This document shows positions 1-53,453 of a DNA stretch of 64,000 nucleotides, piece by piece. The notes beneath the pieces are model-generated. The model ran no database searches. It was not told the origin of the DNA and worked only from the letters and a program-made list of their open reading frames with translations. A program made the translations under genes and the position numbers. Each line of letters begins with the position of its first letter. The stretch's first letter is position 1. This stretch comes from Podarcis liolepis (Eukaryota): the NCBI GenBank assembly GCA_965112155.1, contig OZ218107.1; one strand, written 5' to 3'.

Positions 1-129
1 AACCCTCTTCTTGGCGTCTTCTTCGTCGGTGACCCCTTTGGCTTCTAGGAGGAAGGTGAAACGGGAGGCGTACGCTTCCCAGTCTCCGGATGCTGGGTTG
101 AACGGCGAGAAGCTGCTGTTGGTTGCCAT
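1..129 (-). CDS. Gag N-terminus of a Ty3/Gypsy LTR retrotransposon (runs off the window)
   Basis: ATG at 129 gives MATNSSFSPFNPASGDWEAYASRFTFLLEAKGVTDEEDAKKRV, open to the window edge. Resembles the PFnP..DW..Y..R.F pattern of Gypsy Gag N-termini and lies just after the LTR and PBS. Confidence 0.8.
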   Translation of the reverse strand, partial: MATNSSFSPFNPASGDWEAYASRFTFLLEAKGVTDEEDAKKRV

Positions 130-10999: not shown

Positions 11000-12051
11000 A
11001 AAACAGCACTGAACCAGCCCTTTCATTAAAAGCAGTCAGTTCCCAAAAGCCTGTTGGAACAAGAAATTCTTCAGCTGCCAGTGGAAGGACAGCAAGCAGG
11101 GAGCAAGTCTAGCATCTCAAGAGGGAGTTTCAAAGTCTGGGAGGAGCCACTGAGAAGGGCCTCTCCCATGTCCCTACCAAGGGTGCTGGTAAGGGTGGCA
11201 GGACCAATAAGAGAGTCTCCCCAAATATCTCAAAACACAGGCAGGTTAATATGAGATAATACAGCCATCAGAAAGCTAGGGCATAAGCCACATAGATGAC
11301 AAGGACACAGAAGAGAACAGCCCCACCCAGTCCATCACTTTGTCCTGAACTGTGTTGGAAGATATATCCTGGTGGCAACTGAGGGTGTCAAACGGGGTTT
11401 TTTCGCTGTTTAAACTATAAAATCAATTCACCAGTTGTATACAAGTATCTGCTCACACAGTGTTGGCTTTCCTACCACTGATACAATATCTCTGAACACT
11501 GTTATCCTTCAATTTTAGGCTGTGCTCCTATATTCACTTACCTGAGAGCAGGTCTCATTGAACTTATTTCTGAGTGGACATGCATTTGGTTGCACTGTTC
11601 TTTGAACGCATAGCTTTATTCTTTCCTGCAATTTAATCTCATTGTGTTCTGAACTTGACTTTTTCCATCTTCACACCTTTCTGAAATCTGTTATTTTGGA
11701 TGCTTTATTCTCTCGGTGCACAAGGTATTGGCAGAGAGAACTCCCGTTACCAGCTGCTAATGGGAATTTTGTGCTTAAGTCTCCTGGGCGTTAGAAGTGA
11801 GAACGTTCTCTTCCTCTTTGAAAGCAGCTCTCTTCTTTGAGCATTCGCAGAAAGCACAAAACAAATCGATGCCCTGCCTGGCTAGAGACTTCTTCGACTA
11901 GCTGAAGTGTCCGATTTTGGTCCCAAACTCTCAGATACGGAACGTCCATTAACAGTCCAGATTAGAATTCTAATAAACTGAAACATGATGGCCTTCCAGA
12001 GCTCAATATTCAGAAACCCAAATAGGGAAAAGTTGAATATTTAGAGAAATA

Positions 12052-12310
12052 CCATATTTTTCGCTCTATAAGACACACCAGACCATAAGACACACCTAGT
12101 TTTTGGAGGAGGGAAACAATAAAATAAATATTCTGAATCTCAGAAGCCAGTACAACAAGAGGGATTGCTGCACAGCGAAAGCAGCGATCGCTCTTGCTGT
12201 TCTTGCTTCTGGGATAGCTGCGCAGCCTGCATTCGCTCCATAAGACGCACACACATTTCCCCTTACTTTTTAGGAGGGAAAAAGTGAGTCTTATAGAGCA
12301 AAAAATACGG
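12052..12310. mobile_element. Tc1/mariner (Tigger-like) MITE, family C
   Basis: TA-CC(G/A)TATTTTT...AAAAATACGG-TA ends. Confidence 0.8.
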
Positions 12311-12386
12311 TAAGCCATGGGAGTGGGGCTTTTCTGCTTCTCAATCTTAGGAACAGCTGGTTGTGAACTCTTCACATGCCATAGAA

Positions 12387-12522
12387 CAGGTACCCCCAAC
12401 CTGCGGCCCTCCAGATGTTTTGGCCTACAACTCCCATGATCCCTAGCTAACAGGACCAGTGGTCAGGGTTGATGGGAATTGTAGTCCAGAACATCTGGAG
12501 GGCTGATGGTTGGGGATGCCTG
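12387..12522. mobile_element. Short palindromic hAT MITE
   Basis: CAGG...CCTG ends; exact TSD CCATAGAA (12379-12386 / 12523-12530). Confidence 0.85.
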
Positions 12523-13089
12523 CCATAGAATGAGGTGACTGAATGCTGAGGAAGTACAGCTGGCTGCATCACCTCAGACGCCGGCTCTGGAGTTGAGTCA
12601 TGTTTTTGAAAGCTCACCTGTGGAGCAATGTAGAAAAACAAACTCAGAAGGGAGAAACTTTTCTCTTTGATGGGCTAGTTTGCTGGTAGTTAGCACCCCA
12701 CCTGCATCCTGAAAAGGTAAAATCGGGGCCACTTTGTGGCTTGAGGGGCTTCAGTTGCTTTTAGGTGGCTGAAAACCGCCATTTAAATTTCCCACAATGC
12801 TCCTGGCAACAGTACGATAGGGTTGCCACAGGAAATCAAAATGGCAGCGGTCCCTCTTACTGTTTTAAAGCAGGGCCCAGGGCAGCTGCCTGAAAGTGCT
12901 GTGTATTGACACACATGGTGGCTACAGAGAACAGTCCTGTGGTTGAAGGCGTCTTCTGCTTGAAGTGTTGTCTGGTTCAAATCTGGGTTAAATGCAATGA
13001 GCTAAAGGAAAGGAAAGGTCTCGCAGTTCTCCATCAACTGTCGGTATTTGACTGAGCTGGGATGCAGGTCACCTGGCTGCAGTCATTCC

Positions 13090-13290
13090 CACAATGGTAA
13101 AATTGATTTCTAGTCCCAGGTTCAAATCCACACTCAATCTATGACACTCACTGGGTTACTAGGGCCAGTCACTGCCTCTCAAACTAGCCTATCGCACAGG
13201 GTTGCTGTGAGGATAAAATACGTTTGTGGGTGTCGGTATGTAACCATTTACACCATACTGAGTCCATTGGGTTAAAGATGGGATATAAAT
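13090..13290 (+). mobile_element. Old MIR/CORE-like SINE remnant
   Basis: B-box-like GGTTCAAATCC followed by CAGGGTTGCTGTGAGGATAAAA; boundaries approximate. Confidence 0.5.
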
Positions 13291-15664
13291 GTAGTAATAA
13301 AATGTACATTCATACATATAAATTATTCTTATTCTAATTAATTTGCATACCACCCTATAACCTGCATATCTCAGGGTGGTTCACAACATAAAAATCACAA
13401 AATAAAAACACGAAATACATAATAAAAATGAAAGCAAGTACAACCCAACAATCCCCCCCAACAACACATTTTAAAAAGACATTTATTTTGCATAAAAGTG
13501 GTATATGTTTATATCTGAAATGACACAGACACGGACACACACACACTTCACTTTTCTCAAGGTAATGGTTTCCTCTTCTGATTTTTCTGCTTGCCTTTGG
13601 CTGCTAAATGAAAGAGTTGCTCCCTCTACAGGACACTTCTGAAAGTAATAATCAACTTATTTTAGGGATGAAGTGGGTATACGATTTCTATTCCACTGTA
13701 ATAGAAATAGGAAATAAGTGTTGTAGCAATTTACATTTATTTATTTATATTTTTATTTACTTATTTCATAAAATTTATACACCACTTGATAAAAGTTCAA
13801 TAAAGATGACTGTTTACCACTACCTGTGACGTACTGCCAAATGAGTGAGGATAATTTTCTTACCCCTTTCTTCTGATCATATGCAAAAAGGTGGTAAAGA
13901 TTTTCCCCCTCTGTTTGGCAGAATGCTTCAGATGACTGGCTTGCCATTTAGCTTACCATCTTCAACTATGTAGTGAGAAATGGGCAAAGTGGAGGTCCTG
14001 AGTCATCGTAATCTTTCAATCCTTAGAAGATAGGATGGTTTGGAAGCCGGTCCCCAAACCAGACTGAACAGCTCTGGATTCAGAGTACATTAAAGCCTGT
14101 ACAAAGCATATTGAAGTAATCAATTCTATCCCGTTTCCTCCAGAACCGGGTAGAAAATATCTTGTCTAATGTGTAAATAAACTATCACATTCAGTTCACA
14201 TTTAAAGGCGTACCTACCTAATTCACAATTTCTGAAACAACACAGCTGAAATCCATCCATCCTTCAAAATTCACATTTCCCTAAATTTTGCAGTACTCAA
14301 GCTGTGTAATGCATACAGAAATGTATATCTTAGGGTAAATTGCCTAATACACATATTAGGCAAAATTGCATATAAACATGGGTATAATAGGAGAAATTTG
14401 CATTAACATGCTTATGAATTTTTATGAGAATTTTCAGAAAAATCACAAAATGATGTGAAAATGTGGAGAGCAGTTTTTAAGACTGGGGGGGGGGGGGGGG
14501 AGAAAAACTGAACAACTGACAGACTTGCCCATCCCACCTATTTCAGTGGGAAGGAGTAAGTATATGTGTAACTCAACAAGGATCAATGGGACTAGGCCTC
14601 AGTTATCTACAAATATTTACCTTTGGCTGAATCATGCCTCTAATCACCTTAAACCCCAATTTTTCATTCCTCATTTTATTGTCCACATGGGGGAACCAAA
14701 TGTATTGACTTTAGGCAGCTGTATGTAAACAAACACCTATAAAGACTTTGCAGAGTAAAAACCAAACTCCTGACAGAGCCTTCTTTCAGTTTCACAGGCA
14801 TTGTATTCTAGCAGTAAAAAAAGAAAAGGAAAAATCTGGCATAACAGATTAAAGTGTAAACAGAAAGTCTGCTGAACCTAAAGGACAGGAGAGAGCTATA
14901 GCTCTTTATTAACCTGGAGAGATTCATCTATCAAGATTTCACATCTGTCTCTTGCTTCTTCTTCTTCTTAAGACAAAGATTTAATGTTTGCCCTGCCACT
15001 CCCCAAGTTTGGATTTAGAGCTTTGACCTTGGATCCCTTCCCATATGCTTTTGGTGCTGTGCTTATTAGCCTAAAAGTACATGCTGTATTTGTGTGCTTC
15101 AGAGGGTACAGTTGGACTGAAAGGCTGGAGACTTTAGGTGCAACCAGGAGCAAATATTAGAGCAACCGTTCCCCCACCAAATGAAGTTGGTCTAGGGCAG
15201 AAGTGGGGAATGTGTACCTCCTTAAGATGTCTCTGGACTGCAGCTCCCTGAGTACTGGTCATGCTGACTGGGTCTAATGGGAGTTGGAGTCTTAACAACT
15301 GGAAGACCATCTTTGGTCTCAGGGGGGGGGGGAGACTCGAGATACATTGTATTAGGCATTGTGGATATTTTCCTCCCACATATGCCAACATTTGTGATCT
15401 CTCTTATGTCTCTATCTTCAGATCAAGCTCTAGGAACTCGACGCTGTTCTCTTTTCTTGAGTGAACGCTTTTCTCCCCCCCTCCCTTTTCTCTCCTTTAA
15501 TTTGTTAGATCCATTTCATTATTTTTTTTCAGGCAGACATCAATATTTTCATTTTTTTTAAGGGTGCCAGCATGTAATATCAAAATGCAGTTTCCAATAC
15601 GTACGATATAAGTAAAAGCAACTGTAAAAATAAGTAAAACAATTGTTTAAAATACAACAGACTA

Positions 15665-15894
15665 CAGTGGTACCTCTGGTTACAAACACCTCGGGTTGCA
15701 GACTCCACTAACCTGGAAGTAGTACGTCAGGTTAAGAACTTTACCTCAGGATGAGAACAGAAATCGTGCGCCGGTGGAATGGCGGCAGCAGTGGGAGGCC
15801 CCATTAGCTAAAAGTGGTACCTCAGGTTAAGAATGGTTTCAGGTTAAGAACGGACCTCCAGAATAAATTAAGTTCATAACCAGAGGTACCACTG
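15665..15894. mobile_element. Tc1/mariner-type MITE, family A
   Basis: CAGTGGTACCTCTGGTTA TIRs, TA flanks. Confidence 0.9.
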
Positions 15895-17037
15895 TAACAG
15901 CAGATAAAGCCTTATCAGCTCAGTTTGTTTGTTGTTGTTTTTTTTAAAAGTAAAATATTTTCTACAGCAGCCTTTCCTTTCCCTTTCTTTTCTTAAATTA
16001 CAGTTTCAGCAGGAGCCAGGATTGGGACTACAATGAAGGGGTCATGCTACAGACCTGACAAAAAAATAAAATAAACCACCCTCCAACTTATTCACAATCA
16101 ACAGGTCTGGATGGAGACTTGATATTCCACACACACATCCTGAAGCAGAAAAATCACAACTGGTGCATTGCTGCTAAATCACTCATATCTGGAGGCATCC
16201 TGGACTTTATATATGAAACAGGTAGTCTACCACTGAGTTATGAACTCAGTCCAAATAGATCCTAAAGCAATCATGTACAAGGCAAAGCGGCAAAGTATCA
16301 GACTCTTCAGGGAACTACTCAGCAAACACTGTCAAGTCAAAAGTCTGGATATTTGAATTAGCCTTCTTTTGGGATTCAAAACTTGAGACGCTTTTGCAGT
16401 TCCATCCCTTCCTCAATTTGTGCACCATTGTCAATAATAAAATAATTCACCAGACTGGCCTTAATTTTTTCATTAAAAAAACCACATACCCAGTGGACAC
16501 ACGTAAAGCCCAATTAAAATAAAACTAAATCTGCAAAACAAGGCGGCTTAAGTGTTCTTACACGTATTTCAGGCACACGTTATGGCTTGGTTTGTCTCAT
16601 GAATACCTCAGCACTAATATCCCCAGAGTCTGTTTAAATGAACTGGCTGTACCCAATATGAAAGGGCATGAGTTTCAATCTAGTTCAATTCCAGACAAAC
16701 TATGTGAAATCAAACAAAGGAAAGCTGGAAGAATTGCTTGCCTCAAATTACACTGTAGATATAAAAGACTTATCCTGAAATAATAGCTTATGGCAGGAAT
16801 AATGGGCTTTATTAATATATTCAATTACTCATGGCAGTGCCTATACATTGAATTGTATGAATAGTTCACCATTCACACATAATCTTAGAGGGGGGGAAAT
16901 ATTCTGCTTGAGGCTAAGATGGAAATTAATTTGTTTGTTGAAGCTTGCCCTGTTTACAGTTTTAGCTATTGTTTCTGCAGTTGAAAGGGTTGCACTTAGT
17001 ACTGCCAACAGATTTAATAAAGTTTATTCCCGATGTT

Positions 17038-23349: not shown

Positions 23350-23824
23350 ACAATGATAATAAATAAAGAGAGGAGGGGAAAAAATCAGTTCAGAACATAA
23401 TAGTCAATATTACCAGAAAAAGTACGGAGAACATGTTCTTAGTAAATACTATTAAGCCAGGGGAATCCTCTGAAATATTCATTCACAGCTTGATCCCCCA
23501 AATGCTGGTCCAGCACTTCTTGCTGTGAGACGCCTGGGACTTATCACTATCACAGTTACTGTCTGTTGTTGACAAAACAGCTTGTGTTACGGTTATAGCC
23601 AAAGCCAATATATAACTAATGAAAGTAATAATTTGCAAAACAATCTTCCAGACTTTATTCCTGCGTAAACTCTTTCTAATTTCTTTAGGTCATGTACCAA
23701 AAGTCTTGTTGGCTTTTTAATCTGGTGCATAGAAGCTCTGTAAAGTGTATAATACCACTTACTGGCTGCTCTTCTTTTTAACCTCCAATTTCAAAATTAT
23801 TGTGTAGCAGTGATGTAATTAGAA

Positions 23825-24661
23825 CAGTGTTTCCCAACCTTTTTTGGGCAAAGGCACACTTGTTTCATGAAAAAAAATCTCGAGGCACACCACCATGCCA
23901 GATGGGGAAAGGTCACTTTTTACTTATGTAAAAAAAAATAAAAAAATAGTAACAGCATAGAAGGTAATGGTTAGGCTAGCATCCCTCTTCCAAATATGCT
24001 AGGTTTTTATTTGCAGGGACTGTTCTACATGGGAAAGCATTCAGCACTGTCATTCTCCCATCTGCCATCTGAATTGGTACTATTCTGGGTCAACTTACTC
24101 TGCTGCATGTGTAGATGAAAATGGCACCAAGTGTGGGGGAGGCGGCAGAAGAGGTTTCAGATACAGGATATTAAGCATACACGTACTTCAGATTGAACTG
24201 GTTGCTTGCTTTGCAAGTTTTCATTTCCCAAATGACTGCCTTGGCAAGCGCAATACCTACCAGGCTCAACGCCGGTCTCGCGCTGCCGCTTCCCACGCTC
24301 TCAAGGACCCGGGAGGAGGAAGGCGTGAAGGGAATCCCGAAGGCGCAAAAACCTCGCGCATGCGCAGGCCTTCCGCCTGCGACAGCCCAGTAGGCCGGCC
24401 GAAGCGAGCGGCGATGGGATGTGGGAGGGAGCTCGCTCACCACCCCGCGTGTGCCTATGTGGGGCACGTTACAGCCCCGTGACGTCAGCGCCACGCAGGC
24501 AGCCAGGCAGGCAGACGGCGAGAGCCCCGCGCTGGGCGGCCTCTCCTCGCCGTCGCCACCCCGCCTCTCACCGCCCGACTCGCCCGCCTCCCTCCCACGG
24601 CACACCAGGCAACGTCTCGCGGCACACTAGTGTGCCGCGGAACACTGGTTGGGAAACACTG
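23825..24661. mobile_element. Non-autonomous hAT (Charlie/Buster-like) element with CpG-island-like internal segment
   Basis: Perfect 15-bp TIR CAGTGTTTCCCAACC; exact TSD AATTAGAA (23817-23824 / 24662-24669); subterminal GGCACAC repeats. Confidence 0.9.
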
Positions 24662-24768
24662 AATTAGAAAAACATTTTTCCCCATTAGCATCATTATTGG
24701 GCCTACCTAAGTTGTTGTGGTTTTTTTAAAAAAACTGTCTGACAGAGCAGTCTTATATGGGTTTAAGT

Positions 24769-24895
24769 TACAGATAGGTAGCCGTGTTGGTCTGCCATAG
24801 TCAAAATAAAAAAATTCCTTCCAGTAGCACCTTAAAGACCAACTAAGTTAGTTCTTGGTATGAGCTTTCGTGTGCATGCACACTTCTTCAGATAC
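24769..24895 (-). mobile_element. Penelope-like element terminal (pLTR) fragment, 127 bp
   Basis: Exact 12-bp flanking duplication ATGGGTTTAAGT (24757-24768 / 24896-24907); carries a minimal hammerhead motif typical of Penelope pLTRs. Confidence 0.75.
24858..24895 (-). ncRNA. Minimal type I hammerhead ribozyme motif
   Basis: Minus strand GUAU-CUGAAGA-A-GUGUGCAUGCACAC-GAAA-GC-UC^AUAC: core CUGANGA and GAAA, palindromic stem II, minimal palindromic stem III (AGCU), UC site, 4-bp stem I. Confidence 0.8.
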
Positions 24896-26561
24896 ATGGG
24901 TTTAAGTAAGGATCCATTGAGTTAAATGGGATTCACTCCCAGGTAAGTGTGCAGGAGACTGCAGAAAAAGTTCAAGATAGAGCAGGATGGTTCAGATCAA
25001 TAAATATAGATTCAAAAAGCAGGACTGTAGATGTCTGGTAAAAGCTCACACCCCTTTTGTTCATGCATCTTTTGGGAATTCTGCCCCACGGTTCATGCAC
25101 TAGATATAATATTGTAGATAAAGACTAATTGAGTTAGGAAGGGGAGAATAACTCTTATGTATTATGGGAAACTTATGGATAAACTATTACTGGATGGTAA
25201 AAATGCTGCTCAGGGAAGAGTGATTCCCATGTCAGGCAATATGCCCAAAGAAAGGGTGAATCTCCAGAGCCAACAGCACAGGAAGTCTTTCATATCAATT
25301 CAAACAAACACCAATTTGAGCAACCAAGTCTTGAGACACGAACCTCTGGTTATTTGATGCTGAATGTAAAATATTAGCCTGAAATCCATGAACTCAAATG
25401 ACGACTTCAGTTTTCAGAATAGATGAAACAGAAATTTTAAAATCTATGTAAAGTGGGTGTACAAATAAAGGGTGGGATCCAAGACATACCCAGAGTAGAC
25501 CCATTGAAATTAATGGACAAAAGTAACATGGGCATAATTAGCACTGGACATCAGCCAAAATATATGCATTATAGTGTAGAAATTTTAATTATCATGCCTC
25601 ATGGTAAGTCTCTGCATAACACTTGGTATGATCCAGAATTTTGGGGAGCTAAAGTAGTCTGCAAACAGGGAAAAATAAGAGACAGATAAGGCATGAAATG
25701 GGATACTAGAAACTGTCATTTCAGTTCAGGATTTGAACCTGGGATGGATATCTAATTTTTCTTTGTTGATACCCTATCTGAAAAAAGCTATATATTCTCA
25801 TCACCGTTCTACCCAAGCATACTAGAAATAGGTTGTGTTGTATTCAGTGAATCTTATTCCCAGTAAATCTGCATGTGACTGCAGCCCCAGTTGCTCTCTG
25901 AGGAAAAAGACCCACTGAACACAGTGCAATTTACTTTTGAGCATAAGATTGCATCAGGCCTCATTGGAGGTATCTGTAGAACATATTCATTATGGTATGT
26001 GCGCATATTATACAACATAACAAATATGTCAAGTTGCATTGATGGGAGATTAAATGAAGCAGCAATACAGAAGATTATCTACATGCAAGCATTACATCAA
26101 TATTCTTTTCTGTTACCATGATTAAAACAAAATCAATTACCCAAAACTGCAACTCTGTATTCATAATATATAATCATATATAAGTAACACTTATGGCTCC
26201 CCTAATACATATTAAATGTAAAGTTAGCCACATTGCCTCATAGCTGATACACAATTAACACAGTGAAACAATAGATCTTTTGAGTAAGTCTCTTAATTTG
26301 AATGTCAGAACAAGTTGTCAGTGGTCAGAGTTTCACAGCACACTTTATCATCATCAACACATCCGTCTATTCTTGGAAAAACCACTTAATAAAGCAGTCA
26401 TTACTGTCAAATATTCTAAACCGTATTCTGTACCTCTATTTGTAATCTTTATTAGATCAGTCAAAAGCTTTGCAAAATCAATTGGCACAAAGACTTTCAA
26501 TGCTCTGTGAGCCAATGTACTCCCTACAATACCAGCCAGTTGTTCCTGAAACAGTGATAAA

Positions 26562-26751: not shown

Positions 26752-27115
26752 GTGATAAAGCACTATAAGCTGCACCCCATTCTAAATATTCCTTTGCTGG
26801 TGACACAAGTTACACATCAGACTATTGTCTTCATTGACCTCTTTAGAATCAGAGTTAGCTCTACCATTAGGCCCAAGGAGGCAGCTGCCTCAGGTGGCAG
26901 ATTATGAGGCTGAGGCTCAATGGTGAGATGTTGGAGGATAGAGTTGTGTGTGTCATGTACTTCTACTGCCAGTCTGGTCACCTTCAGCACACAGAATACG
27001 TGGGTGTACCATTTCGTCCTTCACCTCAAGCAGCAAAATGTATTAGGCCAACTCAGAATTCACACATGGTTTTGTAGATACACACACTCACCCCACACCT
27101 ACCTGAATCAAATTA

Positions 27116-27433
27116 CAGTGGTGCCCCGCAAGACGAATGCCTCGCAAGACGGAAAACTCGCTAGACGAAAGAGTTTTCCGTTTTGGAGGTGCTTCGCAAA
27201 ATGAATTTCCTATGGGCTTGCTTCGCAAGACGACAATGTCTTGCGAGTTCCTGCTGGTTTTTTCCCCTCCCCCCCTTTTTCTAAGCTGCTAAGCCGCTTA
27301 TCAGCTGATCCGATAAGCCGCTAAAAGCCGCTAATCCGCTAATCCGTCAATGGGCTTGCTTCGCAAGACGAAAAAAACCGTTAGACGAAGAGAATCACAG
27401 AACGGATTCTTTTCGTCTTGCGAGGCACCACTG
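27116..27433. mobile_element. Tc1/mariner-type MITE, family B
   Basis: CAGTGGTGCC(C/T)CGCAAGACGAA TIRs, TA flanks; close copy at 48690-49031. Confidence 0.9.
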
Positions 27434-27568
27434 TATTATATACACAGCCACATGGAGATATCTCTTCTTCTATGTGGCTGCATATCCATGTTTATGTTCA
27501 CTTAAGTGAAGTGAGGGGTTAGTGTTTGTGTATTGGATCAACAGGCACAATGCTCCCATGGTCTGGAA

Positions 27569-27821
27569 AATGGGTAGGCAAACTAAGGTCTGGGGGGCCG
27601 GATTTGGCCCAATCACCTTCTAAATTCGGCCCGCAGACAGTCCAGAAATCAGCATGTTTTTACATGAGTAGAATGTGCCCTTTTATTTAAAATGCATCTC
27701 TGGGTTATTTGTGGGGCATAGGAATTCGTTCATTATTTCCCCCCCAAAATATAGTCTGGCACCCCACAAGGTCTGAGGGACAGTGGACCAGCCCCCTGCT
27801 GAAAAAGTTTGCTGACCCCTG
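27569..27821. mobile_element. hAT-Charlie-like MITE
   Basis: GGGTAGGCAAACT...AGTTTGCTGACCCCTG ends; exact TSD GTCTGGAA (27561-27568 / 27822-27829). Confidence 0.8.
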
Positions 27822-29038
27822 GTCTGGAAGTTGGGAGTTGAATATTAGTTCAACATTCTGAATGACTGAAAAGGCTTTCTCCATCCCATTTAATATTTCT
27901 CGGTGGTGTCTTTTGTAATGCATTACATTGATCAGGTATGACAAGTCCATAGTCTGAACTACAAACCAGTGCAAGATCTTCCACTCTGCATTTCGAAGCT
28001 AAGATGGCAGCTGAACACTCAAACATTCTTCAGAAATCAACATGAGCTTGGGATTCCAGTGAAACAGAAGAATGGCTATAGATCCATGAAACAAGAGTAA
28101 TGTCTGCTAGCACTGTGAACTACTTGCCAGAGACTTCTAGGGACATTCAGGTTGAAATGAGAGGTGGATAATTAGAAGAGCACAGAGCAAAAACGGAAGC
28201 AGGTCTGAAATGTCCACTCTTCTGTGGCTCTTCTAATCAGTAGAGGTGCCAGTGGCAGTACGGCTCTGACTGGGATGCAAATCCCTTCATATTATGCTGA
28301 ATGCAGGAGTAGCCAGTGCAGAGTAGCAAGGCCACGCGGCTGCTTGTACAGCAGTGGTTCAGCTGCTCCTTAATGGGATGGGGCAGCATGGCAGTCAGGT
28401 TGGGCCAATGTCGGAAGGAGACACTGGATTTGCTCTACTGCTGCCTTCACTGCCACCCAGCCCCAGCCCTGCCCCATTGAGCAGCAGCAACACTGCTGTC
28501 AGGGGAGCTGGGGCATGTCGCTGCCCCACTGCACTGGCCATTCCTGGTTGAACATTACTGCATTCCCTTCAGTATACATATCTCTTAAGGCTTTATGGAA
28601 CACAAGAGTGGTTTCCCCCCCTTACCTTTGGATTGTCATTTTGCTTAAATTCATTTTGTGCAGACTGTACATTTGAGCGGAGGGGGCTCGAGTCTGAGGC
28701 CAGCGTAGGCAGCCCTGTTTCCCCTCCTTGCCACAGTGTCCATTTCTACCCAGTTTGATAAAGCTGGAGAAGGCAATCAAAGTACTCAAAACTGGTCCGA
28801 ATAAGCCGTGTCCCTCTTAAGACAAGTGGTTTGGTTTCTGAGGTTTGGTTTCAAATGGCATACAGTTGGAAGGCACACCACAAAAGTCTAGATTAGGACA
28901 GCCCCTTTATAACAGCCAACATTCACTTCTTCCTTTGCAATTATGTTCTACCAAGTCTTTGGTCCGATCCCTTTGTTTGTTTGTTTTGGTAGAAAGATTC
29001 ACACACCACTGGCTAGGCACTGTCAGGCTGTCATGTCT

Positions 29039-29245
29039 CTATTCAGTTTTAGGCCGGAAAGTCCCATCTGCGCCTTTTAATATTTTGTCGGCGATGCTCC
29101 CCATATTCTTCTTCATAGCTTTCACAGGATTCTCATGCAGGAGTGTCTGTATTAGATACTTCTCCCGTTTAATTTTGCTTTTGGTTTTCTTTGACACATC
29201 GGGAATTATGTGTGAAATAGCAAATGTCACCAAGTAGATGATATG
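29039..29245 (-). CDS. ANO6: ANO6 last coding exon
   Basis: CAG|[31 protein letters not shown]...RPKTE*; TAG at 29039-29041. Confidence 0.95.
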   Translation of the reverse strand, partial: HIIYLVTFAISHIIPDVSKKTKSKIKREKYLIQTLLHENPVKAMKKNMGSIADKILKGADGTFRPKTE

Positions 29246-50871: not shown

Positions 50872-53453
50872 GATGCAATGCTAACTCAACCATGGTGTTT
50901 TTTATTGAAGATTTCTTAGTTTACAAAAATACGTGCATTGTCTCTTTTTCTAAGTTGTGTTTTCTACAGATCAGTTCCAGTTGTGGTGAGACATTAGTGT
51001 TGCATGCAGTGTTGCATGGGAGGAAAACAGGTGGAGGGAGATGGTAATGCTACTCGTCTTCTACTTAGTGTATGTGTGGGGTTTTAACTCAGCCATGGTT
51101 AAGACAAGAACAAGGGCCTGGGACTTACCCCCACCTGTCTTTGGTATACATTGCCCCTGCTCACCTTAACCATGATTGGTGCCTACTCTAAGTAGAGTTT
51201 TCAGTTAGCAAGGATTTGAATCTTGCAGAAGCTATGCTGTTAGAACACCACTGTGGGAAGTGTGCATGTTACTATAATGCACTAAAATAATGTGTTGCAT
51301 CATTGGAAATCCCTGTATTAAATTATAATAGCACCAGAAAGCCATTTCGCATGGTGAAGCAGTTGGCTGTTGGGTGACATGACCCATGAGCACTTCAGTA
51401 AGTTGTTCTTCCATTACTGTAATTATTATTGTTAATAAATATTTAAGAATTATGAATTACTGGCAAGTCTTTTATATTCAATTTAAATATTGTAGAAAAT
51501 ATGTAGTTTTGGTCCATTTTAATGTTAAGTGTCGGAGGACTAAGTTGCAACATACTTAACATTGAAAGCCTGTCGTTGTCAATTTGTAATATTTGCCTAA
51601 AATGTTACAACGGCACCTTTCTGTATATTCACCTTTACAGAGTGCTAATGGTGGCCTAAATGTTATGTGACATACTGTGCAATTAGATTTCAATACAGCA
51701 CTAATTTTAATCACCAGCAAGCAAGCATGGTGATTAAACAGGGTGGATTAATGCTAGTTATTGTGACCTTGTAAATAGCATCTATTCAGTGAAACAAGAT
51801 GCTTTCTGGGTAAAAAACAACAACCCAAAACTTTACCATGACCATTTAATACATTAGTTGCTAACAACTGTTATGTGTATAGAGTCATAGAATAGAATAA
51901 GGGACCACGAGGGTCATCTAGTCCAACCCCCTACACTGTGGGACTCTTTTACCCAACATGGGGCACAAACACATGACCCTGAGATTAAGAGTCTCATGCT
52001 CTACCGACTGAGCTATCCAGGTGTGCAGTAGTATATGAACTAATAAAATGAGGAAAGAAGCAAACGTTTTCTCACCCACACAAGTGCCTCTTTCCTGATG
52101 TAATAGTTTATCACATGCAGGGTTCTTTTTAAAGGGGGAGCACACACAAAAATGAAACCCTTACCTTCAGTCTGAAATGGGACACTCCAGAAGTCTACCC
52201 ACAGCAACAAAGCCATACAGTGGTACTTCAGGTTACAGACGCTTCAGTTTACAGACACTTCAGGTTACAGACTCCGCTAACCCAGAAATAGTACCTCAGG
52301 CTAAGAACTTTGCTTCAGGATGAAAACAGAAATCGCGCAGTGGTGGCAGCGGGAAGCCCCATTAGCTAAAGTTGTACCTCAGGTTAAGAACAGTTTCAGG
52401 TTAAGAACGGCCCTCTGGAACAAATTAACCCGAGGTACCACTGTATTTTGGCTTTGGTTTGGATTTAACCCCCCCAGCCCCCCCAACCTCCTGCCTCAAA
52501 TAATGTATTTGAAAATAGCTTACCCCATACTCCCATAAATACTGCAAACACAAGTGTTCCGAAGCTATCGAAGATACACAGCTTCTGGAAAGCATTCGGA
52601 AAAATAGGGGTTAGCATACAATTTTGCATTGTTTTTTGGCACAGCTAAAGAACATAGGCTGTTACACAACACCTAATTTCATAAGAGGGGCTACCTATGC
52701 ATGGAAACAGATTTCCACATGGCAGACCATCTCTTCTGCCATGGAAATGGAAGCCCCACATAGACATTTGGCATCCTTGCAGGTTGCATACAATGCCACA
52801 AGAAAAGCATTCTTTATCATTTATGGGGAAGGACTGAACTCAGACACCTCCTTGCTGCTTTCTTGCCCCACAGCTAATCAGCTGAAGACATTGACCATCT
52901 GCTTGCTAGAGGGGAGGAAGCGTTTGCCAACTGGAAGCAATGGCCATGGCACACAGCTTGCTACTGTTTGAGAAGTTGCCTTGATAACAGCCTGCATTTT
53001 ATAGTTAAATAAAGTTTCCTTTTTTTAGTGTTCTGCCAAGTTTTAGAAAACAGAACTGTAACGCCAATCTAGTCCCACATTATGGAAAACAGCAAAATAT
53101 GTGATACATAAGGTTTTTTGTTTTGTTTTGTTTTTAAAGGCAAATCATTTTATAACGCCTACTTATCCTGAAAAGAGAGGCAAAATACGTTTCAGTGCTG
53201 GGAATATTAAATGCATACATAAAAACCTGAGCAAACTGAAAACAAATGAAATGTCAAAAATTATATATTCCCAATGTGATGGCAGCAACCATCAGATGAT
53301 AATATGGTTGTGTAAAACTAATATCACAGATTAGCAGCTCCAGCTGCTGCATTCTTATCATCATATAAACAAAAGATCTACCAGTGGAAGGCAAACTATA
53401 ATGTGATAAGCTTATCACATGAAAAGCATGCTAAGTCTAGGTCTATTAAAACA

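What the first reader, a model, noticed from the sequence alone, without database searches (positions are those of the whole stretch)
24757..24907. Hammerhead ribozyme motif in sense orientation in the putative ANO6 3' UTR
Seen: a 127-bp insertion with an exact 12-bp duplication contains, on the ANO6-transcribed strand, GUAU-CUGAAGA-A-[GUGUGCAUGCACAC]-GAAA-GC-UC^AUAC. All core nucleotides are present; predicted cleavage is between 24862 and 24861, ~4.2 kb after the stop and upstream of the distal poly(A) signals. Known: Penelope-like elements carry such minimal type I hammerheads, whose short palindromic stem III is thought to need dimerisation. Inference: long ANO6 mRNAs could be cut, perhaps only when paired in trans with another RNA carrying the same repeat. 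That would be a repeat-seeded, concentration-dependent mRNA-cleavage system. Caveats: stem I is only 4 bp here, and the family is probably high-copy, so this copy may be inert.
Basis: partly seen in the sequence, partly recalled or inferred. Interest (0 to 1): 0.8.

Follow-up and report, generated by a model that had tools for sequence, protein, structure and literature searches.

The report
Ordinary Penelope-element hammerhead copy near ANO6
The hammerhead-ribozyme motif is really there, but it is the standard passenger of a very abundant, recently inserted Penelope-like jumping element that is missing from a sister species, and nothing shows that it lies in, or cuts, the ANO6 messenger RNA.

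Summary
A 127-bp insert (24769-24895) sits between exact 12-bp duplications. On the ANO6 strand it carries a complete minimal type I hammerhead (24895-24858), with a predicted cut between 24862 and 24861, 4,177 nt after the ANO6 stop. It is not chance: a relaxed descriptor gives one hit in the window and none in 200 shuffles.

It has every published hallmark of the Penelope-like-element (PLE) minimal hammerhead. The insert's 3' end lies 117 nt after core base A9, inside the reverse-transcription start window (111-118) measured for the Anolis Poseidon element. The family is high-copy. The insert is young: a related species' contig shows the empty site with one copy of the duplication.

The functional reading is not supported.
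- No RNA evidence reaches the site, and three AATAAA signals come first.
- There is no partner copy within 64 kb.
- The AGCU stem III contact is predicted at a Kd of about 3 mM.
- With native flanks the ribozyme fold is predicted to be lost.
- Published PLE hammerheads are inactive as monomers.

This scan has already noted such motifs on other DNA of this genome (113 notes). Verdict: a known kind, low interest.

The parts
24757..24768 (.). Target-site duplication, left copy (ATGGGTTTAAGT)
   Evidence: Exact 12-bp direct repeat. A related species' contig has a single copy at the empty site (tables 5 and 5c).
24769..24895 (-). 127-bp Penelope-like-element-derived insertion, sense on the minus strand: hammerhead at the 5' end, AC-rich terminal region at the 3' end
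   Evidence: Bracketed by the duplication. High-copy family: summed contig depth is 11,000-17,000 against 15-25 on unique bins. Absent in organism B. All three sense frames are closed. No other copy in the window.
24858..24895 (-). Minimal type I hammerhead motif: stem I 24895-24892 / 24861-24858; CUGAAGA 24891-24885; bulged A 24884; stem II hairpin 24883-24870; GAAA 24869-24866; GC 24865-24864; U16.1 24863; C17 24862
   Evidence: The isolated 38-mer folds into stems I and II at -6.8 kcal/mol; the 46-nt stretch 24900-24855 folds the same way at -7.6 kcal/mol, z = -0.78. No Rfam hammerhead hit.
24769..24843 (-). 3' module: predicted stem-loop (24843-24786) whose 3' arm is the AC-rich tract CAGACCAACAC, then the terminal GGCTACCTATCTGTA. 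Proposed counterpart of the PLE reverse-transcription initiation region
   Evidence: Fold (not better than shuffles, z = 0.07). The insert ends 117 nt after A9, against RT starts 111-118 nt into the Poseidon_Ac ORF in an AC-rich stem-loop (PMC11167929). This is an analogy of position, not shown homology.
24896..24907 (.). Target-site duplication, right copy (ATGGGTTTAAGT)
29039..29233 (-). Context: last coding exon and stop codon (TAG, 29041-29039) of ANO6
   Evidence: phmmer against PDB: Anoctamin-6 residues 849-911 of 911, E = 1.1e-15. ORF listing.

Best explanation
This is a young insertion of a short Penelope-like-element (PLE) derived unit. It was made by the PLE endonuclease and reverse transcriptase through target-primed reverse transcription, which left a 12-bp target-site duplication. 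The unit is the terminal module of such elements: a minimal type I hammerhead, about 70 nt of body, and an AC-rich region where reverse transcription starts.

I favour a non-autonomous mini-unit (about 60:40) over a 5'-truncated autonomous element, because all reading frames are closed and the family seems to share a discrete 5' end. The hammerhead is a passenger of the element, and its role, if any, belongs to the element's own life cycle.

As a lone copy it has a 1-bp stem III, a 4-bp stem I and no partner nearby. I expect it to be catalytically inert, or nearly so, in any host transcript that reads through it. Its position 4.2 kb downstream of the ANO6 stop codon is incidental.

Shown: the motif, the duplication, the empty site in a relative, and the high copy number. 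Inferred: the insertion mechanism (by analogy with Anolis Poseidon_Ac) and the inactivity (from published assays on other PLE hammerheads and from folding predictions).
For: - Exact 12-bp duplication around 127 bp.
- Empty site in organism B. Contig X5 joins 24749 + ACTTAT + 24896, which gives one copy of the duplication and no insert. Contig X1 has about 93 letters between 23816 and 24896, the length expected if both this insert and the neighbouring transposon are absent (tables 5, 5c, 8).
- The family is high-copy in all DNA runs. It is present in RNA reads equally on both strands, and 94% of those reads run on into unlike sequence, so they come from other copies.
- Every hallmark of metazoan PLE minimal hammerheads listed in PMC4209133 is present: helix I of 4-5 bp, a long helix II, an unpaired base between positions 9 and 10.1, the G10.1-C11.1 pair, and a palindromic 15.2-16.2.
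- The 3' end of the insert is +117 from A9, matching the 111-118 RT-initiation window in an AC-rich stem-loop of Poseidon_Ac (PMC11167929).
- The insert includes the 34 nt upstream of the cut, so its template RNA was not cleaved. [quoted passage not shown]
- Inactivity: published monomers show no detectable cleavage and dimers show low cleavage. Eight of nine Xenopus dimers did not cleave. There is no partner in the window. Predicted P(stem I) is 0 and P(stem II) is 0.11-0.43 with 85 nt or more of native flanks.
Against: - I could fetch no other family copy: the metagenome, viral and prokaryote collections held none. Family consensus, covariation, unit ends and the link to an autonomous PLE are therefore untested here.
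- The positional match to Poseidon_Ac is an analogy. The two sequences are not visibly homologous.
- The 3' stem-loop folds no better than shuffles.
- Inactivity is inferred, not measured. PAc's hammerhead is protein-assisted, so a PLE protein in the cell might activate copies.
- No usable RNA data exist for the window's own species, so read-through transcription is neither shown nor excluded.
Confidence: 0.85

Rival explanations
1. One reading: the motif cleaves long ANO6 mRNA isoforms when it pairs in trans, through the palindromic stem III, with other RNAs carrying the same repeat. That would be a concentration-dependent control of the mRNA.
For: The core is intact and in the same orientation as ANO6. 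The family is abundant and present in RNA reads. PLE hammerheads are thought to act as dimers (PMC4209133). In Xenopus, exon-overlapping retrozyme copies lie mostly in 3' UTRs.
Against: There is no evidence that the transcript reaches the site, and three AATAAA signals lie upstream of it. The insert is absent in a related species, so it is not conserved. The AGCU/AGCU contact is predicted at -3.5 kcal/mol, Kd about 3 mM, many orders of magnitude above cellular RNA concentrations. The much stronger predicted same-sense dimer goes through the 14-nt stem II palindrome, which puts the two AGCU tetramers at opposite ends of one long helix (the geometry is my inference). Family RNA is present equally in antisense, which would favour duplex formation rather than a ribozyme. 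Native flanks are predicted to abolish stems I and II. In Anolis no RNA-seq ends were found at the cut site.
Confidence: 0.03
2. Incidental low-level cleavage. Read-through or independent transcripts that contain the copy are occasionally cut, perhaps helped by PLE protein acting as a chaperone as for Anolis PAc. There is no selected host function.
For: The PAc hammerhead cleaves only when the element's protein is added (PMC11167929). The family appears young and active in this genome: perfect duplication and an insertion difference between samples.
Against: In PAc the RNA needed for protein action extends to +172. This copy ends at +117, because reverse transcription starts internally, so it probably lacks part of the binding region (inference). 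Stem I is only 4 bp. No pile-up of read ends was flagged at 24861/24862 among about 200x of family RNA reads. That is a weak test, since it was a single-cell library of another species (table 6).
Confidence: 0.1
3. The insert is a 5'-truncated copy of an autonomous Poseidon-type PLE, not a dedicated non-autonomous mini-unit.
For: Most PLE insertions are 5'-truncated and keep a single terminal repeat. The 3' end matches the PAc RT-start window.
Against: All three sense frames are closed within 127 nt although the insert is young. In PAc the ORF runs through this region. Reads from other copies stop matching exactly at the insert's 5' end with heterogeneous continuations, which suggests a discrete family boundary (table 7).
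Confidence: 0.3
4. A chance resemblance to a hammerhead in ordinary non-coding DNA.
For: No Rfam hammerhead model scores, even at E <= 10. The fold of the isolated motif is not better than shuffles (z = -0.78).
Against: Descriptor: one hit against none in 200 shuffles. The motif sits in a duplication-flanked, high-copy mobile unit. It shows features that were not required by the descriptor and are typical of PLE hammerheads.
Confidence: 0.01

Closest known systems
Minimal hammerheads of metazoan Penelope-like elements (Cervera & De la Pena 2014, PMC4209133; Lunse, Weinberg & Breaker 2017, cited but not held in the library)
   Same: Type I topology. Helix I of 4 bp. A long, here palindromic, helix II. 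An unpaired base between A9 and G10.1. The G10.1-C11.1 pair. Helix III reduced to A15.1-U16.1 around a palindromic GC. Mostly single dispersed copies, massively abundant, and reported in reptiles.
   Different: Nothing of substance. This exact sequence was not found in the searchable literature. Helix II is 5 bp with a 4-nt loop (6 bp if the two-base AU centre is ignored), against the 7-8 bp typical of Schistosoma families.
Poseidon_Ac (PAc) of Anolis carolinensis (PMC11167929)
   Same: A hammerhead followed about 110-118 nt later by an AC-rich region where reverse transcription starts. That region defines the 3' end of genomic insertions. Uncleaved RNA is the template.
   Different: There is no visible sequence homology: PAc has CUGAGGA, an ACGU palindrome and a different helix II. 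The PAc ORF starts in the hammerhead and stays open, whereas here all frames are closed within 127 nt. Whether the element's protein assists cleavage is unknown here.
Animal non-LTR retrozymes (PMC7229834; 10.64898/2026.07.22.740005)
   Same: Short, non-autonomous, PLE-related units with a type I hammerhead. Monomer copies are dispersed, and those in exons lie mainly in 3' UTRs.
   Different: Retrozymes are defined by tandem copies that give circular RNAs. Here there is a single monomer with no tandem partner, and no circular RNA is shown.
Discontinuous hammerhead in rodent Clec2 3' UTRs (Martick et al. 2008; from my own knowledge and the reference list of PMC4209133)
   Same: A hammerhead on the sense strand downstream of a stop codon.
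   Different: The Clec2 ribozyme has stable helices and tertiary contacts, is conserved among species, lies in a documented UTR and cleaves efficiently. None of these holds or is shown here.

Membership tests
Hammerhead ribozyme (catalytic core) | Conserved boxes C3-U4-G5-A6-N7-G8-A9 and G12-A13-A14, the A15.1-U16.1 pair, and H17 at the cleavage site | tested here: met
   CUGAAGA 24891-24885; GAA 24869-24867; A15.1 24866; U16.1 24863; C17 24862.
Hammerhead ribozyme (catalytic core) | Three helices around the core that are stable in one molecule | tested here: not met
   Helix I has 4 bp and helix II has 5 bp plus a tetraloop. Helix III is a single A-U pair around GC, which cannot close (one search gives an impossible loop energy). 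With native flanks P(stem I) falls to 0.
Hammerhead ribozyme (catalytic core) | Match to the curated covariance models (Rfam Hammerhead_1, Hammerhead_3, HH9, HH10, Hammerhead_II) | tested here: not met
   No hammerhead family was reported at gathering score or at E <= 10 on 24700-24960. These models expect a real helix III and loops, so this says little about the minimal variants.
Hammerhead ribozyme (catalytic core) | Self-cleavage 3' of position 17 | not testable with these tools
   Needs in vitro transcription or end-specific RNA sequencing. No end pile-up was flagged at 24861/24862 in family RNA reads (table 6), but that library is a weak test.
PLE minimal hammerhead (min-HHR, PMC4209133) | Short helix I (4-5 bp), a helix II longer than the canonical 4 bp, and an unpaired base between 9 and 10.1 | tested here: met
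   GUAU/AUAC; a 14-nt palindromic hairpin; bulged A at 24884, compared with the description read.
PLE minimal hammerhead (min-HHR, PMC4209133) | G10.1-C11.1 pair and palindromic 15.2-16.2 | tested here: met
   G at 24883 pairs with C at 24870. AGCU lies at 24866-24863.
PLE minimal hammerhead (min-HHR, PMC4209133) | Carried by a Penelope-like element or its truncated or non-autonomous derivative | tested here: inconclusive
   A duplication-flanked, high-copy unit whose 3' end falls in the PAc RT-start window. No RT/GIY-YIG ORF is linked to it in this window, and no other copies could be fetched.
Non-LTR retrozyme | Two or more tandem units, each with a hammerhead, able to release a unit-length (circular) RNA | tested here: not met
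   A single motif and a single family copy in 64 kb. At most a retrozyme-type monomer.
Host mRNA-embedded regulatory ribozyme (Clec2 type) | Lies within a documented transcript of the gene | tested here: inconclusive
   The three 'RNA?' runs have flat depth and are DNA. The single true RNA run, from another species, gave depth 0-1.8 on unique UTR bins. Three AATAAA signals precede the site.
Host mRNA-embedded regulatory ribozyme (Clec2 type) | Conserved at the orthologous position in related species | tested here: not met
   Empty site in organism B (X5), and apparently in X1.

The most novel reading that the evidence does not exclude
The insertion is polymorphic or lineage-specific and lies in a long ANO6 3' UTR isoform. 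When the element's protein is expressed, or when the transcript pairs with another copy, the hammerhead cuts that isoform. Carriers and non-carriers of the insert would then differ in ANO6 long-isoform stability. That would be a natural case of a transposon-delivered ribozyme acting on a host mRNA.
Probability: 0.04. Interest if true: 0.55.

Novelty: already known. Interest (0 to 1): 0.12.

Why it matters
It would also suggest a mechanism that could apply to hundreds of genes at once. The evidence points the other way. This is one routine copy of a published class of motif (PLE minimal hammerheads) in a young, non-conserved insertion.

Its modest value is descriptive:
- It gives a clean filled-site / empty-site pair for a tiny PLE-type unit.
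- The copy was made from RNA that its hammerhead had not cleaved.
- Its 3' end falls in the same position window as the reverse-transcription start measured for the Anolis Poseidon element.

All three fit the 2024 internal-initiation model.

Tried and rejected
- **Rfam:** scans at gathering score and at E <= 10 gave no hammerhead model hit. The only listed hit near the motif (bglG element, E = 9) is noise.
- **Fetching other family copies, to test covariation and define unit ends:** two metagenome scans with a body word and a hammerhead word, one viral scan and one prokaryote-genome scan all found nothing. No covariance model could be built.
- **Exact motif in the literature:** no paper holds it.
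- **Papers not held:** the Lunse et al. 2017 paper and the supplements of PMC4209133.
- **RNA evidence:** the runs offered as 'RNA?' proved to be DNA (flat depth). The one real RNA run was single-cell data from another species that lacks the insert.
- **Earlier findings by sequence:** blank.
- **Bacterial-type promoter and terminator scan:** irrelevant to a vertebrate and found nothing.
- **Double-hammerhead energy:** it cannot be computed directly, because the kissing helix III crosses both stem I helices and is formally a pseudoknot. I estimated the helix III contact alone instead.
- **Comparison with Poseidon_Ac:** The comparison was by eye.

Full report
**What is there.**
Reading both strands and the repeat finder confirm the anatomy. 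An exact 12-bp direct repeat, ATGGGTTTAAGT, lies at 24757-24768 and 24896-24907 and brackets a 127-bp insert, 24769-24895.

On the minus strand the insert begins with GUAU-CUGAAGA-A-GUGUGCAUGCACAC-GAAA-GC-U-C-AUAC (24895-24858). In hammerhead numbering:
- stem I is GUAU/AUAC (4 bp);
- C3-A9 is CUGAAGA;
- one extra A follows A9;
- stem II is a 14-nt perfect palindrome (5 bp plus a CAUG loop) closed by G10.1-C11.1;
- G12-A14 is GAA;
- helix III is only A15.1-U16.1 around GC, so positions 15.1-16.1 read AGCU;

A relaxed descriptor asked for stem I of at least 3 bp, CUGANGA, an optional bulge, stem II of at least 4 bp with G-C closure, GAAA, a palindromic 0-6 nt insert, and UH. It finds this one site on both strands of the 64-kb window and none in 200 shuffles.

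No Rfam hammerhead model matches, even at E <= 10. Those models expect a real helix III, so this shows that the motif is not a canonical hammerhead. It does not show that the motif is spurious.

**Gene context.**
The minus-strand ORF 29233-29039 matches the last 63 residues of mouse Anoctamin-6 (849-911 of 911, E = 1e-15) and ends in a stop. The motif is on the ANO6 strand, 4,177 nt after the stop.

Minus-strand AATAAA hexamers occur at 27682, 26730 and 26448, that is 1.4, 2.3 and 2.6 kb after the stop. The next ones are at 24006, 23654 and 23344. An ANO6 transcript must therefore ignore three canonical signals to reach the motif.

**What the reads say.**
The three runs offered as 'RNA?' cover all unique bins at flat depth (about 15-25), so they are DNA. 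They are still informative.

In organism B (X5), one contig joins 24749 + ACTTAT + 24896. That is the unoccupied target with a single copy of ATGGGTTTAAGT and no insert. The same contig also lacks 23824-24667. X1 carries the same species label as the best holders of the window. Its contig has about 93 letters between 23816 and 24896, the length expected if both insertions are missing.

The insert is therefore lineage-specific and possibly polymorphic. With its perfect duplication, it is young.

The bin holding the insert has a summed contig depth of 11,000-17,000, against about 20 for unique sequence. The tool warns that this is not a copy number, but it does show a high-copy family.

The one true RNA run (single-cell, organism B) gives about 98x on each strand over the family bin. 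Of those reads, 94% run on into unlike sequence, so they come from other copies transcribed in both orientations. Unique bins just after the ANO6 stop have depth 0-1.8.

The run therefore says nothing about ANO6 read-through, and organism B lacks the insert anyway. No pile-up of read ends was flagged at 24861/24862. That is a weak negative, given the library type.

**What it is.**
Cervera and De la Pena (PMC4209133) describe the metazoan PLE minimal hammerhead as follows:
- helix I of 4-5 bp;
- a longer helix II;
- an unpaired base between positions 9 and 10.1;
- a conserved G10.1-C11.1 pair;
- a palindromic 15.2-16.2;
- thousands of mostly single dispersed copies, including in reptiles.

Every one of these features is present here.

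The 2024 study of Anolis Poseidon_Ac (PMC11167929) explains the rest of the anatomy. Its reverse transcription starts internally, in an AC-rich stem-loop 111-118 nt into the ORF, and that ORF begins at core base A9 of the hammerhead. These start sites define the 3' ends of genomic copies.

Counting the same way here, the insert ends at +117, and an AC-rich tract (CAGACCAACAC) forms the 3' arm of the predicted terminal stem-loop. This is a match of position and composition, not of sequence. The stem-loop itself folds no better than shuffles (z = 0.07).

The insert keeps the 34 nt upstream of the predicted cut, so its template RNA had not been cleaved by this hammerhead. The same paper found that uncleaved RNA is the dominant substrate.

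All three sense frames are closed within the 127 nt, although the copy is young. Reads from other copies stop matching exactly at 24896, with heterogeneous continuations (table 7). I therefore lean towards a dedicated non-autonomous mini-unit rather than a truncated autonomous element. With a single copy in hand this stays open.

The first and last 12 nt share TATCTG (P about 0.01, post hoc). That would fit a tandem or circular template, but it is only a lead.

**Would it cut ANO6 mRNA?**
Several independent lines say this is unlikely.
- **Published assays.** Single PLE minimal hammerheads show no detectable cleavage, and dimers and trimers only low activity at high Mg2+. Eight of nine Xenopus retrozyme dimers did not cleave. 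The Anolis hammerhead needs the element's protein, and no RNA-seq reads begin or end at its cut site.
- **No cis partner.** There is no second motif or family copy in the window.
- **Weak trans contact.** The AGCU/AGCU contact is computed at -3.5 kcal/mol, a Kd of about 3 mM. That is far above any cellular RNA concentration.
- **A competing dimer.** The thermodynamically preferred same-sense dimer uses the 14-nt stem II palindrome and swapped stem I strands. By my reading of hammerhead geometry, this puts the two AGCU tetramers at opposite ends of one long helix, where they cannot form helix III together.
- **Antisense RNA.** Family RNA is equally abundant in antisense, which would favour plain duplexes.
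- **Native flanks.** With 85 nt or more of native flank, the predicted probability of stem I is 0 and of stem II is 0.11-0.43. An upstream UGCACAC competes for the stem II strand.
- **No conservation.** The insert is missing from the sister species, so there is no sign of selection.

These are predictions and analogies, not measurements.

**Comparison and novelty.**
The motif works like, and by every testable feature is, a PLE minimal hammerhead (PMC4209133). The unit resembles a monomer of the animal non-LTR retrozymes, now argued to be non-autonomous PLE derivatives (10.64898/2026.07.22.740005). It fails their defining tandem arrangement.

That ribozyme differs in every respect that matters: stable helices, conservation, a documented UTR and measured cleavage.

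Earlier notes of this scan list 113 hammerhead/Penelope observations in this same genome. One follow-up, on a 'KCND3 3' UTR' copy, reached the same conclusion as mine. I treat these as leads only, but they agree that the motif is routine here. The class is already known, so interest is low.

**Limits.**
- No family alignment could be made: four collection scans were empty.
- There are no RNA data for the window's own species.

Noticed in passing
window 23817-24669: An 837-bp hAT-like non-autonomous DNA transposon (23825-24661). It has perfect 15-bp terminal inverted repeats, CAGTGTTTCCCAACC / GGTTGGGAAACACTG, at 23825-23839 and 24647-24661, and an 8-bp target duplication AATTAGAA at 23817-23824 and 24662-24669. 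It is absent from organism B and apparently from X1 (joint 23823->24668), so it is a second young insertion only about 100 bp from the PLE insert.
   Followed up: partly
window 24250-24600: The inner part of that transposon is CpG-rich, with GC up to 0.74 against 0.42 for the window. It carries the palindromes TGACGTCA (CRE-like), GCGCATGCGC (NRF1-like) and GGCCGGCC. It looks like a captured promoter or CpG-island fragment. It might start transcription close to the hammerhead copy.
   Followed up: no
window 51950-52022 (minus): A tRNA-like sequence at 40.8 bits with several mismatched stem pairs. It resembles a tRNA-derived SINE head rather than a working tRNA gene.
   Followed up: no
window 27060-27455 and 27654-27851: Very high-copy repeats (summed contig depth 7,000-49,000) lie inside the first 2 kb after the ANO6 stop. 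One contig form in X1 and X5 skips 27114-27433 (320 bp). This is another insertion difference between lineages in the putative 3' UTR.
   Followed up: no
window 24769-24895 (minus): The first and last 12 nt of the PLE insert share TATCTG, and the 5' end coincides exactly with the first base of hammerhead stem I. This would fit copying of slightly more than one unit from a tandem or circular template of about 118 nt. It cannot be tested with one copy.
   Followed up: partly
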